A DNA stretch of 63,308 bases, counting the filler, from Choristocarpus tenellus KU-1152 (Eukaryota; Protista; Phaeophyceae): NCBI GenBank assembly GCA_964200185.2. It is 10 parts of 10 records of this genome, joined end to end, with 100 filler letters (N's around TTAATTAATTAA, not from the genome) between each part and the next. Parts side by side here need not be neighbours in the genome. Positions count along the whole stretch, not along the records: positions 12,939 to 19,181 come from CAXNAD020008588.1; 9 more parts are not named here. One strand, written 5' to 3'. The notes beneath the pieces were generated by a model. It was not told where the DNA came from, made no database searches, and saw only the letters and a program-made list of their open reading frames with translations. Below are positions 12,939 to 21,700 of this stretch, one piece after another. A program made the position numbers and the translations under genes. Position 1 is the first letter of the stretch, and each line of letters opens with the position of its first letter.

Positions 12939-13412
12939 GCCTTATTCCCGCTTGATGGGAAAGACTGCAAAGTTGGGGGAAATGACCTCCCTGCGTGGGG
13001 TGATCTCCAAGTGTGCAACTCTCGATCAGGGGCCTTCCGTTCGATCTCTCTTGACGACCAAGAAGAACAGTGCATTCGGCTGCTTCATGTGGCCAACAAC
13101 AACCAGCTCAAGTGCATGCTTTCGCCTGGAACGGAGGTGTGTGGGCCGGGCGCAGAGCTCTACTTATGCGTGGCAGCCACTTGCCCTCTCTACTACATGT
13201 GTTGGACCGAGAAGGCAGACGACGTCAACATTGAATTCACGTCAAAAGTTCCGCAGAGCGGAAGCCGTGACGAGGTCCTCCTCCCCTTCTCCCAAGTTGG
13301 CCCCATGCAGATGTTCATCACTCCTGTAGTTGGGAGGGTGTGCAAACCCCGGGCAAAGAATGACACGAGATCACTGTTCAACGTGCTCCTGGGTCTTACA
13401 GTAGTGCGTTAA
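12939..13412 (+). CDS. C-terminal 157 aa of an unknown protein, open from the contig start
   Basis: Frame open from the first base after the linker to TAA at 13410-13412 (ALFPLDGKDCKVGG...SLFNVLLGLTVVR*). GC-richer than its flanks. No family recognised. Confidence 0.5.
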   Translation, partial: ALFPLDGKDCKVGGNDLPAWGDLQVCNSRSGAFRSISLDDQEEQCIRLLHVANNNQLKCMLSPGTEVCGPGAELYLCVAATCPLYYMCWTEKADDVNIEFTSKVPQSGSRDEVLLPFSQVGPMQMFITPVVGRVCKPRAKNDTRSLFNVLLGLTVVR

Positions 13413-14172
13413 ATATTAATGAGCAGTTTGTGGTTAAAGCTCGAAAATCGAAGCGAGTAATGATTATGGAACTGTTGATTTCCTCCGTCTATCAGACCAG
13501 CCTGTATGGTTTTACCTGCATGATGCATCTACATGCAACCTCTCCTAAGCTGCTGAGGTCCAGCTACAGCACCAGAAGTATTTCATATTGTTTGGGGCTG
13601 TCTACCTGTACACCAGTCACTATAATTCCAATGCCACTGCGTGGTACAACCTACTAAATCAGTTCTGTAGTTAATACATAATACCACTACATGCTGTGTT
13701 GAACCCACTGACCTGGTATTCATGCTTGAATAGGATTGAAGTAAGTGGACAACTCTTGACAGATGGAGAGGTGCATGTAAAGCAACCCTGCAGTCCCAAA
13801 CACACCCAATACTGGAGTACAATCCACTGCTGCAAGTAACCACTGCTGTTTCGCTCCACCTAATCATATTAATGCTGGTGACATGATATCAAGTGGCCAC
13901 TGACCTAAAGAAGAAAGGTATGTTCAAGCAACAAACACCAAGCTGGGGCTTGGGTGAGTACATTGCTTGGGGTATATAAATCTTACTGCAATTATGGAGA
14001 TGGTAAATAAGTCCAATTCAGAAAACACAAAACCATGATATTAAACAGAGGCCAACCCTCAAGTGCCTGTGACCTTGAGATGAGTTCCTGTACATAATGT
14101 GCCAACATGTTCACCTAGCAATACATTCTACGAACTATGAATAGAGAAGACTGTCTTAAACTGTTTCATGCA

Positions 14173-17100
14173 TTATCTATCTACTCCAGAAGAAGACATT
14201 TCAACAGTCAGTAAGACCGTCGGGTCATTGACCTCTTCTTGAACATATTGAAGCTCCGTCAGTTCCAGCTGCCGTGAACAGTCCGGGAAAGGTTTTCGAT
14301 AAAGCAACCCAACATGTGTGGTTGAATAAGCTGTTCTGATGGCTCCGTCGGAATAGACCCAGTCAGACAGTCCGTTTACCTCCAAAAGGTCACACACCTG
14401 AACAATAGGAGAAGTAAAAACGATCATTGAACTCAAAAGGTATGCTACAGCAGAACGCTAATATGTAAACACCTGCAGGATATGGAACTGAACTTCATAA
14501 ATTGAGCACACAACCCAACCTAGAGGAGGAATCATACACTTGTGAGAAAGAGCATTGTGGGCATATGTGGATGGACAAAACTCAGTTCTCCTTGGAATAA
14601 AAAACCGAGGTTGTGCTATCAAGACAGCAATACCAGTGGGAAATCCACACATCGCACTCAAAATATTGGAATAGTTGTAGGATCTGATTGAGTTTCCAAG
14701 TTAGATGCATGGCGCTTTGGTAGGGGATAATAGTCACGGGTACTCTACAGAGTGGATCACAAGTCCATTCAAATGCAAAATAAACGTAATAATTCTCCCA
14801 AGCATGCACAGCAAGCAGACATTTTGTACATTATCAAGCAGTGTGTTTTGATTGCTACAGCATATAATGGCAACATTTTCCGTATTGACTAAGAAATTGC
14901 TGGTGCTAGCCAACCAACAAGGCATGTCATATATGCTATTCTTCACCTTAGGATGGTCCTCATTAAATCCATTCTTCATCATCTCTGGAGGTTTAGGAAT
15001 TTTGTCCTCACTTTGGTAGAGTGGAACATGGAGTGCCTTGCTAATGCTCTCAGCCTCGAGGAGTACCTTCGAGGCCAAGAACCAGCATCAAGAGGGTGGA
15101 TGAAGACAGGTTCATCTCACAGGTGCACATTGAAGTCCACCTTGAAATGAGATATATCAAGGGCATTTTGTAGCTACCCACTTTGAATCTATTCTGAGTA
15201 TGTTCTTGCAACAGTTTTCAACAAAAACTTGATCCTATCAATAGCTGCACATTTCACGGCTCCTTGATTACATTTGTCTAACATTCCACTAAGCACCACT
15301 GAAATGTATGACTACCTAACTTTGTAATCAATGACCAAGAAAATTGAGAGAGTTAGTCCTGACTTCCATTTTGAAGTACGAAACTCTTGATTCTAATCTC
15401 AAAATACACACCAATGCTCCAGGCATTCACAAAATCTTGGGGCGTGACCTGCATAACCTTGCTAAGTTCCACTCATCAAAACTGATCTCTACCCATGATA
15501 CTTGCAAATTTCTTCTTGAAATCAACGTGTTGATAGTAGCTCTACCCCACAGCTGAAATTGGTATACAATAAAACGAAGCAAAGGACACACGTGCAATAC
15601 TTGTTGCACCTAAAACTAGTGAGGCATGTTCACACTGCTTACCTGTTCCTCAAGTGCGGAATCTGGGTGACTGGCGTAGTATATTTTATCCATGTAGAGA
15701 GCCGGTGTCATGTCATCTGACCTCAAGAGGAGGCGAAGGACAGCCCGTGCTTCCATGCGACCATGAGCAGACTGCACCCCCACAAGACGGACATTTCCCT
15801 GGAGGAGATACCTTTTGAAGCGATGGTTGCCAATGGAAGGGGCAGGAAGATGGTCACAGATCAAGTTCCTTACGTTCTTTCATGTTACAGCATAGAAGTT
15901 TGAGAATGATAAAAAGAGGTTGATGCAAGCATCCAGTATGATCGCGGTTACTGCAAGCAAATCACCATGTCGAGCACCATGAGGTAAGGGACAGACTCAC
16001 TAACCCTAACCCTAAGTAGCCCTTGGTACATACAAGGGGTGGGAAGCGGAAATTATAACCACTCGTCCAAAGAACATTCAACAGGAGTTGCAGATAATCT
16101 CAGTCAGGGGAATCTAATATTTGTGGTCAACAGGTTAGCAGAGGATAAGCAACACCACAGTACTTGGAAATACATGGTAAGAAATATGTTGAAAGCATGC
16201 TCATGAATCTGTGTGTGTGTGTTGTGTATGTACATTTCTTGGCGCATGACTTCTGAAGCAAGTACTCACCCAAGAAGGGCCTTATTTTGGACAGAGCAAG
16301 CTGGCCGGATTCCCATGCAAGACCTCGTATCCTCGCCCATTCGGAAGATCACCTCGGGATCAGATACGCCAGCCAGGGGGCAAGGATCAGCCTGTAAGAA
16401 ATATTAGAATAGTGATGAAATAGGAAGTGAGAGCAAAACGGATGTTACCTGAGAACAAACACCCAGAGTGAGAGGCCTGGACAAGACAATTCTAAAATAG
16501 ATGTGTTCATTGAAAAAAAAATCTGCCTCATGCCTTAAAACTCTCCGCTGCCGCCGGACTGCAAAGATTAGAATACAGTATTTCAAGGCCTCTTCACTGT
16601 CTCAAAGAGGCTGATTGGTCAGCAACCTTCGAAAGTTGAACAACGTTTTGAAAAACTCAACTACAATAAAATGGTTTTAGAAAGCACAAAAATAACATGC
16701 CCTCAACATGCCAAAAACAAGCCAATCGCCACTCACGGAGGAAGAGAGGACAACATAAAAGAACTATTGTCCTCTATTCCTTTAAGCAAGTCATTGTGCA
16801 GAAGAAGCGCCAATTTAATAAACTGCATTAGTTGAGGGACACTATGGCGCAGGTACAAACACACCAATGCATACATAAATCCCAACCTCTTGCAAAGACA
16901 GATTCCCCGGAACAGTCACTATCCAAACACTTCAAAGGCCAGACATAGCCTGTCAAACACAAAACTCCAGCAAAGAAGAAGATAAAACATAAAAAAAACG
17001 TGTCTATTTCGTACTTCAACAATACAACATGAGGTATATATACCTCAAGAGAGGATGTTACAAACATTGCAAGCGACGGCTGAGTGAAACACAACACCAT

Positions 17101-18725
17101 ACCATATTTGTCTGCACCACTTACTCAGTACAGCTCGTGTGAAGCTATGCCACAGCACTATCGTATCATACCACTACTGCACCAATGTGTAGTGCCCACT
17201 ACACCAATAGGACAAGGAATCACTCAATGGACTCCTGAGACCACCACCGGTCTCCAATGCGCCTCACCTCCCAGATAGTCCGTATCCCTTCTGGGAATTT
17301 GCTCATGTGCTCCCTATTCAACGGATCTTGGAATCGAATAGAGTGAACGGTCTCCTCTGACACACCTAACAGCGCCTGCAGGAATCGGAGGTAAAGAGGA
17401 AACACCTGGAACAACATTAACGTTCACAAGAACACAACACAAAAACACCAAAGGGAGCCACCGCGCTAATAGTGAGCATGGGAGCAGCAGTTGGGTACCT
17501 GTGTGATCTAGAGGACGACTCTCAGAAGTCAACAGTGACACACCGGGCAGAGGTTCAGGCACTACTCCACTGTTTGCTTCAGGGCGTGCAACACAATTTT
17601 TTGCATCACCCTTGGAAGGAGGGGTCTTACGTATAAAATAAATAAAGTTTGAGTACTCTATTAGGGTGTGTTTGTGCAGCCTACTATAACGATCCGGTTG
17701 CTGACAACCTAGAGCGATCAGCACAACATTAACGAGGCTGCCTCTTGAAAGACCCAAACCTCGTGGTTGAATATGACTTGGTATGACAAAAAGTGAAGAA
17801 CTTCAATCACAAGTAGTTCAGGTATGAGTGAGCAATTAAAGTCAGTGGAAATTCAAACGTCAAAACACTTCAGAGTTATCGACGATTGTGATTGGTCAGC
17901 GTAGGTGGTACTACTTTCTTTGAATGAACGACCGACTGACATTTAAAAAAAAAATCTTACAGCATTGCAAATAACTCTACAAAAAAAAAAGGTGTAAGAC
18001 TACGCGAGGTCATTTCTGAGAACATTCAACTTCATGTCATCTTTCGTGTCAATTTTTAAAAAAACAAAAAAACGAGCAAGAAGCGCTAAGACTCTTAGAT
18101 GGTGTGAAGACACTCACACGACCAACACAAGCTGTGAAAGAAAGTACGTGCCAGCTTGGAAGTGCCTCATCAGGATGGTTTGACATACCCTGAACCTGCA
18201 ACACTGCATGTCTCACACTGGCTCTCTCCTTGGCACAACTGTAGTCCATCTCAAACGCAGCATGCACTCTACAAGCATGGGAAACCATGTTCATAGTCGA
18301 CAGATCTGTGGGTCACTGGGGATGGACACCCATAATTGTACCCTCAGCTTATACCACCTCACGATGCCTTTTGTGAGACCTCTTTTTTTCACCTCCAACC
18401 CACTCCATCAAAGTAGACGTACACACGTCATCATCATCCCACCCTCCTCTGCCGTCCTTACAATACCAAAAAGTGAAGTGATCAATGAGCATCACAATGC
18501 AAAATTGCAAATCATGCAAAAAAGGGTCCTGTGCATTATAGAAGTCATAGGCAATTGCATCATTCATCCATAGGCAGAAATAATTTGTCGATGTCTGTGC
18601 TGTTTGACTGATACCTCTCGATGAGCCTTGTGCATGATGTAGTAGTCCGCCAGCGCATTGGGAGATCGCCATGTCTGCAGTATTGTTGATAGGGCCTCTT
18701 GGAACCGGACCTTTTGCACCATCTC
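14173..18725 (-). CDS. 8-exon gene (5'-partial, about 350 aa) encoding an uncharacterised domain with a bacterial/phage-like SCM...NKALLGY...ARA.LRLL...YMDKIY...YSD signature
   Basis: Exons 18615-18725, 18393-18456, 18196-18305, 17268-17405, 16270-16391, 15643-15811, 14947-15066 and 14173-14397. All introns are GT-AG with consistent phases (0,1,0,0,2,0,0), giving one stop-free frame ending at TAA 14173-14175. Confidence 0.8.
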
Positions 18726-21700
18726 CTGTCAGAACAAAAATCAACCAATGTATGACTCTCAAAAATGAGAAACTTCCAGGGGCCCAAAAATGCACACTCT
18801 GTTCAAACAACCAGGTTCATATCATTATTATTATCATCATTATTACAATGATTTTTTTTTATTGTAGGTCTTGTGGGATTCCAGACCTTCAGTCTGAAAA
18901 AGGTATACAACGTAAGTTAGTCTGAAAAAGGTGTGATAGGTACTGCTTGACAAAAACAAAGAACAAGATAATCCAACATAGAACCAAAGTTGACCAATCA
19001 CGCAGTGCAGTCTTCGAGACTTTTTTCAGCACCTCACTACTACTCATAACATTGAAAAAAAATCCCTGAAGGGTGGGCACCTTATTTACAATTTGGAAAG
19101 GCAGGGGAGGGGGGGGGGGGGGGGGGGCCCCCCTCCCCAAGAAAAAAAAAAACCCCAGGCCAAAAAACAAAAACAAAAAAANNNNNNNNNNNNNNNNNNN
19201 NNNNNNNNNNNNNNNNNNNNNNNNNTTAATTAATTAANNNNNNNNNNNNNNNNNNNNNNNNNNNNNNNNNNNNNNNNNNNNCCATTGCATTATGACACCC
19301 CTTCACCACAACCAACCTGCCACCGTACAAGAGCACAATTCATTCAATCCCAGGTTTCAACAGGGTATAAGCCTCAATACCTGAACAACATGCACAACCT
19401 GGTCTTGTACTACCTATCCACAACCAGGCCCGTATAGAAATGTCCTTCTCTGTATTGTTGTGTCTGCAACTTTTCCGCACCTCATCATTCTTCCATTTAA
19501 CTCATAATAATACCTGACTCACTCCTCTCCTACCCTCACCGTGTGTTGGGGTGGGTATTGGGATATAGTGCCTCACATCCACTGCTCTTCCCAGTGAAAG
19601 TACAAACCAGTCCTTAACTCTGGCGTGGAGGGTTCTTCTCTTGTCGAACTCTGGCACAACCTTAAAGGTCGGTTCAAGGAGTATATAGCCCACAGTTTCC
19701 TTCTTTTCCTCCCTGCTCTTCACCTGGCGATCCATCAACCTATGTTGTTGGATTTTGTATTCACCTGCGAGTTGATTGTGCTCCCTCCTTCTCATTTTCT
19801 CTTAGCTGTTCGTTGCCCTCCTCAATCTCTTCTGATATTATATGGGACTGTGACCCAGGCGCCAAGGAGTTCTTGCCATCCTCTCCCTCATAACCCAAGA
19901 GTAAACAAGAGGCCTGGAATCACCAACGTCTACTTCATAGACTTTCCTCACACGATATCCCCACTGCCACACAAAATGAAATGGTGTCTCACTCAAACTT
20001 GGCATAGGATGTGTCCCCTCGCATCCGTTCTCTTAGAAAGACAACAGGTGTCCCGCCAAGGTTGAAGTAACCTTCTGGTACTGTCCAGGAGGGGTGGTGA
20101 AGGTGCCATCAAGGTTGTTCTGGCAAAGGTGTAGGAAGTGAAAAATGAGAGTTGTCTGAAGAGGGATGAGACGGGGAGGTGACATGGTGGATTTTTGTTT
20201 TTGGATAAGGATTTGAGGGTTAGGAAGGACAGCATGATTGTTTACAATATCAATGTTGATAGGGGTCTGTGTCATTCAAATCTGTGGTCAAAATGTTGAC
20301 AAAATGAAGAACACATATGAGTCGCAAAGTAGAATATATATGAACTGTTGAGACAGATATATACTATTTGAATATATGGAACATTCCTCAAGATATTTTC
20401 CATCAAGCAAATGATTAACCTAAACAAGAGGAACATCAATATATATTGAGGAATGTGTATGGCACGGAATATTCTTACCTTTTTGAAAGAATCATGTGAA
20501 ATTATTCGCATAGCTCACCCTCTCTGCATGCGGCAGACAAATGGTAGTCACCCCATCGACGAAGCTGGTCCTCACCACCTTGAAGTCTTCCTTGACAAAC
20601 ACCACCTCATCACCAGCACTGAACATCAATCTGTAGCTGGTGTGGTCTGTTAAAGCATAGGCTACTCATCTGTTTGTTCCTTGATACAATACAGTTCCAC
20701 CAGTCAACACCGACTGTTGATTGGTCTGTTACGTTCTGGATGTCACTTTCACTAGTTCGTCATCACCGTATTAACTAAAATCAGAACACCTTAGTACTAA
20801 ACAGTCGCTCTACGTTCCACACAAATAGTAAAGTACAGTATAGTGTACGTCACTTTAGTTGCCTCACATATGTTCCAATTTTGTTCTGTTGTTCTGTTGT
20901 TTGTTTTTCACTCTTTCTTCTTATCAGCAGAAGATGAAAGTTGTACGTTGATGACTGAATATTATTTTCTTTCGTGACTGCCATTGATCCCTCAAATTGC
21001 ACCAAAGCCACTCTTCAAACTGTCTACCAAACACACACGTGGATGTAATATAATCAGAGTTAAAATCATCTGTGGAAACCCTTGCCAGCCAAGGTAACAA
21101 GCCTCTCCACTGAGCATGGACTTCTTTCGTTGAGTATCTTATGAAAGGACACTGAATACACATCACATCATTCTGGATTGAGCAACCAAGAATACTGAAT
21201 TCACATCGCATCATTCTTGACTGAGAGATCAATGACTTCAGGTACAACAGAATAAATACATCAGTGCTTGCAGCACAATCACACCTATCCATAACATAGA
21301 CTACGCATATCATTCATCGGTGCTTTGTAACACCATGTCGCTCGTAGTCTATGCATTTTGCTTACATGTACGATGCATTCAATTCAGGTTTCAACATGGT
21401 CCTTGGCATTCCATTCAAAATTCTGGTGCACAGGGAACTGCAGGAACCTCAACCCAATGTACTCTGATGGCTCCATTTCCACAATTGCAAACATTGCCCA
21501 CTGCAAGCTATCTCTTCTTTCTCTACAGGTGACTCTGCAAGTACAAGTCACCCACCTGGTCTTCAGGGGAAAACCTGAGGTCAATCTCCTTCGATGCAGG
21601 CACGTGGGTGTGCCCTGACACTTGCTGTCTGCCTGTGGACTAATAAGAATCTGTGCATCAACTTGGCGCCTTTGAACTTGGGGACATGCTGATCGTGTCA

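What the first reader, a model, noticed from the sequence alone, without database searches (positions are those of the whole stretch)
14173..18725. Fully spliced eukaryotic gene encoding a prokaryote/phage-type uncharacterised enzyme-like domain
Seen: eight phase-consistent exons give ...SIRFQDPLNREHMSKFPEGIRTIWE|ADPCPLAGVSDPEVIFRMGEDTRSCMGIRPACSVQNKALLG|YLLQGNVRLVGVQSAHGRMEARAVLRLLLRSDDMTPALYMDKIYYASHPDSALEEQ|VLLEAESISKALHVPLY...|VCDLLEVNGLSDWVYSDG... The central motif crosses a phase-2 junction, so ORF tracks miss it. Recalled, not verified: the ordered motifs DP..lf..G...SC[MQ]...NKxLLxY...g..rl.....G...AR..LRLL......P.L[FY][LM][ED][RK]IY...a..l..pl...YSD occur in large hypothetical proteins of environmental chlamydiae, Legionellales and CPR bacteria, and in 'SCM...RA..W...DRIY' phage proteins, possibly a PcfJ-like GNAT fold with a conserved Cys. 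Inference: an old horizontal or viral acquisition that gained introns and was domesticated, perhaps as an effector-derived acyltransferase or defence protein.
Basis: partly seen in the sequence, partly recalled or inferred. Interest (0 to 1): 0.85.

Follow-up and report, generated by a model that had tools for sequence, protein, structure and literature searches.

The report
Algal plastid enzyme resembling bacterial effectors
This is the last third of a real, spliced brown-alga gene from an unnamed enzyme family, probably chloroplast-bound, whose clearest non-algal relatives are large effector-like proteins of environmental chlamydiae and plant-associated bacteria, which points to an old gene transfer into algae.

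Summary
Real gene, 3' part only, from the brown alga Choristocarpus tenellus (NCBI CAM9675490.1). Spliced contigs from one public run confirm six coding exons, not eight, including the phase-2 junction 16270/15811. Further exons lie beyond the contig edge. Full-length homologs (720-1000 aa) occur in brown algae, Phaeothamnion, raphidophytes and haptophytes; most complete N-termini look, by eye, like plastid presequences. No Pfam, NCBIfam, PHROG or PDB sequence match. The C-terminal ~250 aa are homologous (hhalign 99.6%) to C-terminal domains of 500-1600 aa proteins of environmental Chlamydiota, Ralstonia and Rhizobacter; the Rhizobacter gene has a perfect, the Ralstonia gene a one-mismatch, type III effector promoter box. 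The AlphaFold model has a GNAT fold, with an invariant Cys plus conserved Ser, Asn, Tyr and Arg, but no acetyl-CoA loop (0 of 35). Phage relatives are only fold- and motif-level; PcfJ membership is unsupported. Eukaryotic sequences form one long-branch group, and nesting among chlamydiae is not shown (AU p 0.33). Best reading: an old bacterial acquisition, spread vertically within ochrophytes and haptophytes, acting as a Cys-dependent, probably non-CoA acyltransferase in the plastid. Activity and direction of transfer are inferred.

The parts
18615..18725 (-). Coding exon A (37 codons, phase 0/0); internal exon, part of the helical region shared with bacteria; the NCBI model starts at a Met inside it only because the contig is cut
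   Evidence: joint 17403/18613 and loose end behind 18728; matches homologs
17268..17405 (-). Coding exon D (46 codons); helical pre-domain with cross-kingdom conserved R31, H40, W52 (P0001 numbering)
   Evidence: joints; same-size exon in Discosporangium; conservation
16270..16391 (-). Coding exon E (40 codons + 2 nt); start of the GNAT-fold domain: G72, S77, C78, N89, L92
   Evidence: joints; conservation; model
16317..16319 (-). Codon of the invariant Cys78, proposed catalytic nucleophile
   Evidence: Cys in 35 of 35 aligned algal and bacterial rows; role inferred
15643..15811 (-). Coding exon F (1 nt + 56 codons); central beta-sheet of the GNAT fold: Y95, R102, R116, R120, P130, D135
   Evidence: joint 15809/16268; scores E 8e-13 alone against the bacterial profile
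14947..15066 (-). Coding exon G (40 codons); helix alpha3 and following loop
   Evidence: loose ends and joint 14394/14944; homolog matches
14173..14397 (-). Last coding exon H (74 codons + TAA); Y-S-D motif and C-terminal strands
   Evidence: joint; homologous exon in Discosporangium L006 19996-20160
13713..14172 (-). 3' UTR, continuous with exon H
   Evidence: X3 contig 13712-14394 at exon depth 221.7
13324..13712 (-). 389-nt GT-AG intron in the 3' UTR, spliced into a high-copy repeat
   Evidence: joint 13322/13712, depth 89.8, only 30 letters on the short side
15641..15642 (-). Donor of intron F-G: GT in the window, GC in runs X2 and X3 and in Discosporangium

Best explanation
The window holds the 3' third of a nuclear gene for an ~800-900 aa protein that is probably imported into the complex (red-derived) plastid. 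From N- to C-terminus: a signal plus transit presequence, an algal-specific ~420-aa all-helical domain (probably substrate recognition), a ~100-aa helical lid shared with bacteria, and a GNAT-fold catalytic domain. Most likely mechanism (inferred): an acyl or aminoacyl transferase that takes the acyl group onto Cys78 as a thioester and passes it to an amine, probably on a protein. The donor is probably not acetyl-CoA but aminoacyl-tRNA or acyl-ACP, bound by R102, R116 and R120. The catalytic module most likely came once, long ago, from a host-associated bacterium (chlamydia-like effector family), gained a plastid presequence and introns, and was then inherited vertically. Haptophytes probably got it with their ochrophyte-derived plastid protein set. 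Shown: gene, splicing, homology, predicted fold, conservation pattern. Inferred: localisation, catalysis, donor, target, direction of transfer.
For: Splicing and selection. Algal-bacterial homology: hhalign 99.6%, E 6e-25 for the core and E 3e-5 for the helical lid; the algal-only profile scores most bacterial members at E 1e-19 to 1e-9 with Z set to 1e6. Fold: model pLDDT 81; the 50 listed matches in both PDB searches are GNAT-type or related, best Z 7.7, rmsd 3.2-3.4 over 117-118 residues. Conservation: R31, W52, G72, C78, L92, R116 invariant in 35 rows; S77, N89, Y95, R102, R120, Y205 nearly so; R/QxxGxG/A loop in 0 of 35. GNATs that use charged tRNA as donor exist (FemX, L/F-transferase, MprF, Mom; PMC13219725). 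Presequences: a hydrophobic stretch then F, W or L and a basic Ser/Thr-rich stretch in most complete N-termini of Chattonella, Discosporangium, Cladosiphon, Scytosiphon, Ectocarpus and haptophyte-like members (read by eye; motif rule from own knowledge and PMC5462543). Bacterial members: stand-alone genes with almost no shared neighbours, variable N-termini, Ser/Pro/Thr-rich first 50 aa in the Ralstonia group, tandem paralogs in a Waddliaceae MAG, PIP/hrpII box plus -10 box upstream in Rhizobacter (chance 0.01), one-mismatch box in Ralstonia (box criterion PMC3878972). All named eukaryotic hits are ochrophytes or haptophytes, in line with known ochrophyte-to-haptophyte plastid protein flow (PMC5462543).
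Against: Z 7.7 is in the range the tool calls middling, so the fold shows no function. No activity is known for any member. The tree shows a very long branch between algae and bacteria and no root; holding chlamydial and unassigned rows together is not rejected (AU p 0.33). No signal or transit predictor could be run, and the Choristocarpus N-terminus is missing. Many eukaryotic hits are unnamed metagenome proteins, so absence from red and green algae, diatoms and others is a search blank, not proof. None of the top PDB matches is a tRNA- or ACP-dependent GNAT. RNA support comes from one run of one study, and its kind is not on record.
Confidence: 0.45

Rival explanations
1. An ordinary acetyl-CoA-dependent N-acetyltransferase with a diverged pyrophosphate loop; the Cys is a general acid or structural.
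For: All top structural matches are CoA-type GNATs; plastids hold several protein acetyltransferases (own knowledge).
Against: No R/QxxGxG/A in 35 rows, and the loop after beta4 is unconserved; conservation sits on the acceptor side and on beta2/beta3 arginines.
Confidence: 0.18
2. A GNAT-fold protein turned into a Cys-dependent hydrolase (deacylase, amidase, peptidase), or a non-catalytic metal- or redox-binding scaffold.
For: Invariant Cys with conserved His40 and an acidic residue at 74 could form a catalytic or metal site; the CoA loop is lost.
Against: His40 is Gln in two algal rows and sits in a separate helical segment; no hydrolase fold among the matches. Residue geometry could not be inspected.
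Confidence: 0.2
3. The same enzyme with another history: bacteria captured it from an algal or protist host as an effector, or both took it independently from a wider phage and bacterial pool.
For: Algae and bacteria are two sides of one long branch; more distant Bacillota, Pseudomonadota and phage look-alikes exist; effectors often come from hosts (own knowledge).
Against: The domain is far more diverse and widespread in prokaryotes and phages than in eukaryotes, where named hits are limited to two plastid-linked groups; one algal clade argues for one entry.
Confidence: 0.25
4. A secreted or ER-lumen defence or wall-modifying protein rather than a plastid protein.
For: Signal-peptide-like N-termini; effector-like ancestry; two paralogs in Ectocarpales.
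Against: F, W or L right after the presumed cleavage site followed by a basic transit-like stretch in both ochrophytes and haptophyte-like members; low copy number and steady vertical conservation, unlike defence families.
Confidence: 0.12

Closest known systems
GNAT (Gcn5-related N-acetyltransferase) superfamily, e.g. PDB 3t9y, 1vkc, 2eui, 1qsm (Hpa2), 8a9n (DpA)
   Same: Predicted core fold over residues 60-216, Z 7.2-7.7 for the best rows, rmsd 3-4 A
   Different: No sequence match to Pfam GNAT models; no motif-A pyrophosphate loop; invariant Cys and near-invariant Ser in the alpha1-alpha2 loop; extra helical lid and a large helical N-terminal domain with no PDB match
tRNA- or ACP-dependent GNAT-fold transferases (FemX, L/F-transferase, MprF, phage Mom; HlyC and LuxI types from own knowledge)
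   Same: GNAT fold working without acetyl-CoA; conserved basic residues on the sheet
   Different: None appears among the top structural matches; no sequence similarity; the Cys motif is not theirs as far as I know
Uncharacterised large proteins of environmental Chlamydiota, Ralstonia solanacearum (e.g. WP_230680258.1) and Rhizobacter Root1221
   Same: True homologs: shared ~250-aa C-terminal module and motif set
   Different: Unrelated N-terminal halves (repeats, Ser/Pro-rich leader instead of plastid presequence); many carry a ~130-aa insert between lid and core; themselves unnamed. Not RipBT/Hyp9, which is absent from Molk2 (PMC3878972 supplement)
Phage 'SCM...AR...IYG...YxD' proteins (Cyanophage PP ORF10, Caulobacter phage Lullwater gp8) and PcfJ (PF14284)
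   Same: Found by fold (BFVD E 4e-4 and 5e-3) and show the motifs in the same order
   Different: Not detected by the family HMM; hhalign E 0.22 and 0.004; PcfJ only a low Atlas feature hit
Bacterial-origin plastid-targeted proteins of ochrophytes and haptophytes (PMC5462543); HGT genes of brown algae, about 1% of genes (bioRxiv 10.1101/2024.02.19.579948)
   Same: Same route: bacterial gene, presequence, introns, shared by ochrophytes and haptophytes
   Different: Here the relatives look like secreted effectors rather than metabolic enzymes; I found no paper on this family

Membership tests
GNAT superfamily | Mixed beta-sheet core with flanking helices in GNAT order | tested here: met
   predicted model, middling Z but uniform hits
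GNAT superfamily (acetyl-CoA type) | Motif A pyrophosphate loop R/QxxGxG/A after beta4 | tested here: not met
   0 of 35 rows
GNAT superfamily | Match to a curated GNAT profile | tested here: not met
   no Pfam or NCBIfam hit
GNAT superfamily | Acyl transfer activity | not testable with these tools
   needs biochemistry
PcfJ-like (PF14284) | Match to the PcfJ profile | tested here: not met
   no hit at E up to 1 in 22 members; Atlas features 0.81-0.82 with 120-128 shared, a lead only
Phage SCM proteins | Significant sequence or profile similarity | tested here: inconclusive
   fold and motif order agree; hhalign E 0.004 and 0.22; no tblastn or viral contig hit
Complex-plastid-targeted proteins | Signal peptide followed by F/W/Y/L and a basic transit peptide | tested here: inconclusive
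   pattern seen by eye in most complete homologs; no predictor run; own N-terminus outside the contig
Horizontally acquired gene | Eukaryotic sequences nested with support inside a bacterial donor clade | tested here: inconclusive
   algal branch joins among chlamydial rows but unrooted; AU p 0.33
Horizontally acquired gene | Real host gene, not contamination | tested here: met
   spliceosomal introns, spliced contigs, conserved intron positions
Type III effector (bacterial relatives) | hrpII/PIP box with -10 element and Ser/Pro-rich leader | tested here: inconclusive
   perfect in Rhizobacter, one mismatch in Ralstonia, none near three others
Type III effector (bacterial relatives) | T3SS-dependent translocation | not testable with these tools
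   needs a reporter assay

The most novel reading that the evidence does not exclude
A chlamydial secreted effector was domesticated directly into the complex plastid of early ochrophytes, with no red-algal intermediate, and passed on to haptophytes. It defines a new class of Cys-dependent, non-CoA GNAT protein-modifying enzymes that also includes unrecognised type III effectors of Ralstonia and relatives and, more distantly, the phage SCM proteins.
Probability: 0.25. Interest if true: 0.8.

Novelty: new variant of a known kind. Interest (0 to 1): 0.57.

Why it matters
It defines an unnamed enzyme family that bridges algal plastid biology and bacterial host-manipulating proteins. If the plastid reading holds, there is an unknown acyl or aminoacyl modification in the plastids of two major groups of marine primary producers. 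The known chlamydial contributions to plastids concern primary plastids (own knowledge); this would be a candidate entry at the secondary-plastid stage. One assay on a harmless algal member would also give a function to the bacterial and possibly phage relatives. Against high interest: bacterial-derived orphan genes are about 1% of brown algal genes, and GNAT variants are numerous.

Tried and rejected
Eight-exon model: rejected by the direct A-to-D joint and by lack of homology for candidates B and C. Contamination or pseudogene: rejected. Pfam, PHROGs, NCBIfam and PDB sequence searches were blank. Phage tblastn and IMG/VR scans were blank; the weak hit H1 (E 0.5) did not score with the family HMM. 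P0023 is a repeat artefact. The N-terminal helical domain has no PDB match (best Z 6.0) and does not align with bacterial N-termini. No conserved operon around bacterial members. The Ralstonia member is not RipBT and could not be tied to any named Rip.
Full report
Source and method. The piece (12939-19181, 6243 bases) is a whole contig of the brown alga Choristocarpus tenellus. A search with exon F alone returned a 100% identical 264-aa protein, P0001, which is NCBI CAM9675490.1 on a 6243-base contig. Later profile searches and the fold used P0001 by its id, as the database's own model returned by a tool. Residue numbers refer to P0001.

Observation. Six minus-strand coding exons have GT-AG boundaries and consistent phases: A 18725-18615, D 17405-17268, E 16391-16270, F 15811-15643, G 15066-14947, H 14397-14173. 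Three public runs of one study hold the stretch. Exon A joins D directly, so the count is six, not eight; my two extra candidates match no homolog. A 232-nt loose end behind 18728 is a further exon; read by hand, its last codons give a peptide that lines up with the homologs. The Discosporangium ortholog has seven more upstream exons and the same D, E and F boundaries, and differences fall mostly at third positions. So this is the 3' third of a live gene under purifying selection.

Eukaryotic family. Homologs of 720-1000 aa occur in Discosporangium, Ectocarpus, Cladosiphon (two paralogs each in the last two), Scytosiphon, Nemacystus and Chattonella, with partial ones in Phaeothamnion, Heterosigma, Prymnesium and many unnamed marine sequences that group with Prymnesium. 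No named hit came from red or green algae, plants, diatoms, fungi or animals; given the word-based and length-limited searches this is a blank, not a proof. Most complete N-termini show a hydrophobic stretch, then F, W or L, then a basic Ser/Thr-rich stretch, the pattern of complex-plastid presequences (PMC5462543; read by eye). The region after the presequence is predicted all-helical (pLDDT 78) with no known match.

Bacterial relatives. A weak plasmid hit (E 0.02) led to a large ORF of Ralstonia solanacearum MolK2 whose C-terminus aligns with the algal profile at 96% probability. From it came 19 proteins of 710-1190 aa, and a genome scan added MAGs of Chlamydiae K940, Waddliaceae and Parachlamydiales, Rhizobacter Root1221 and two unassigned bacteria. 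Algal and bacterial profiles align at 99.6%, E 6e-25, over the core and at E 3e-5 over 100 helical residues before it. The N-terminal halves are unrelated. The bacterial genes stand alone, with almost no shared neighbours, include tandem paralogs, and in the Ralstonia group begin with Ser/Pro/Thr-rich leaders. Rhizobacter has a perfect PIP/hrpII box with a -10 element upstream (0.01 expected) and Ralstonia a one-mismatch box at -122, features used to predict type III effectors (PMC3878972). Secretion itself is untested. The group P0126-P0136 was labelled betaproteobacterial in my trees by presumption only; its hosts are unnamed.

Fold and active site. The model of P0001 (pLDDT 81, pTM 0.80) matches GNATs over residues 60-216 in Foldseek and VIA-align (best Z 7.7). 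In the Atlas its nearest models are a haptophyte-rich cluster and two bacterial hypothetical clusters (TM 0.59 and 0.63), ahead of named GNATs. Across 35 algal and bacterial rows R31, W52, G72, C78, L92 and R116 are invariant, and H40, S77, N89, G94, Y95, R102, R120, P130, acidic 135, A155 and Y205 nearly so; none has the R/QxxGxG/A loop that binds CoA. This looks like a catalytic site built around Cys78 on the acceptor side, with a donor other than CoA. GNATs that use charged tRNA are known (PMC13219725), and plastids supply both charged tRNA and acyl-ACP (own knowledge). This mechanism is inference.

Phage link. Sequence searches of phages and viral contigs were blank. By shape, BFVD gave phage hypotheticals at E 2e-4 to 5e-3, and Atlas features gave phage-rich clusters at 0.95. 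Two that I fetched, Cyanophage PP ORF10 and Lullwater gp8, carry SCM, a following AR or SR strand, an acidic-x-IY-like motif and YxD in order, but hhalign gives only E 0.22 and 0.004. They are probably distant kin. PcfJ membership is unsupported.

History. Trees on 154 and 246 columns put all algal sequences on one side of a long 100/99-100 branch, with haptophyte-like and ochrophyte groups inside; Choristocarpus pairs with Discosporangium as expected. Rows left out: six partial or misassembled eukaryotic rows, including P0061, and one near-duplicate Ralstonia row in the first tree; a 35-row subset in the second. The algal branch joins among chlamydial rows, but the trees are unrooted and holding chlamydial and unassigned rows together is not rejected (AU p 0.33). 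A single old entry from bacteria is the simplest reading of the distribution; the donor is not proven. Sharing with haptophytes fits the known flow of plastid proteins from ochrophytes (PMC5462543). Bacterial-derived genes are about 1% of brown algal genes.

Verdict. The main additions are the probable plastid targeting, the ochrophyte-plus-haptophyte spread, the missing CoA loop and the effector-type promoters of relatives. New variant of a known kind, interest 0.57.

Noticed in passing
window 15641-15642; L006 18910-18911: The F-G intron donor is GT in the window but GC in runs X2 and X3 (15641 A>G) and GC in Discosporangium. X3 shows this intron retained at depth 63, above the 6-35 of most other introns. 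The NCBI Discosporangium model lacks two residues at this junction and omits exon H.
   Followed up: partly
window 12939-13410: High-copy polymorphic repeat (depth in the thousands in all three runs) with a + strand ORF 13011-13412 of 133 aa and no Pfam or PHROG match; the gene's 3' UTR splices into it through a 389-nt intron.
   Followed up: partly
L001 2932-3285: Upstream of the Ralstonia gene lies a short in-frame duplicate of the gene's own C-terminal motif region, suggesting a decayed tandem paralog; it overlaps the hrpII-like box. Some strains in the cluster hold frameshifted or truncated copies (P0142, P0146, P0147), left as they are.
   Followed up: no
L008 2706-2768: Perfect PIP/hrpII box with -10 element in Rhizobacter sp. 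Root1221 upstream of an unannotated ~900-aa family member: candidate unrecognised type III effector.
   Followed up: partly
L011 355-5444: Two adjacent paralogs in a Waddliaceae MAG, with a third on another contig (L013, 1639 aa); chlamydial-type members have long N-terminal regions, repeat-rich in P0137.
   Followed up: no
P0061 (L044 160-3078): Divergent 972-aa eukaryotic member from JGI sample 3300017276, organism unnamed, with Thr in place of Ser before the Cys and an insert in the core; possibly another ochrophyte lineage, useful for the haptophyte question.
   Followed up: no
window 15812-15814 and 15067-15069: Two of five coding-region acceptors are AAG with weak pyrimidine tracts, yet are used.
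   Followed up: yes
P0003 residues 545-592: The Discosporangium ortholog has a tandem repeat insert in the helical domain that no other member has.
   Followed up: no
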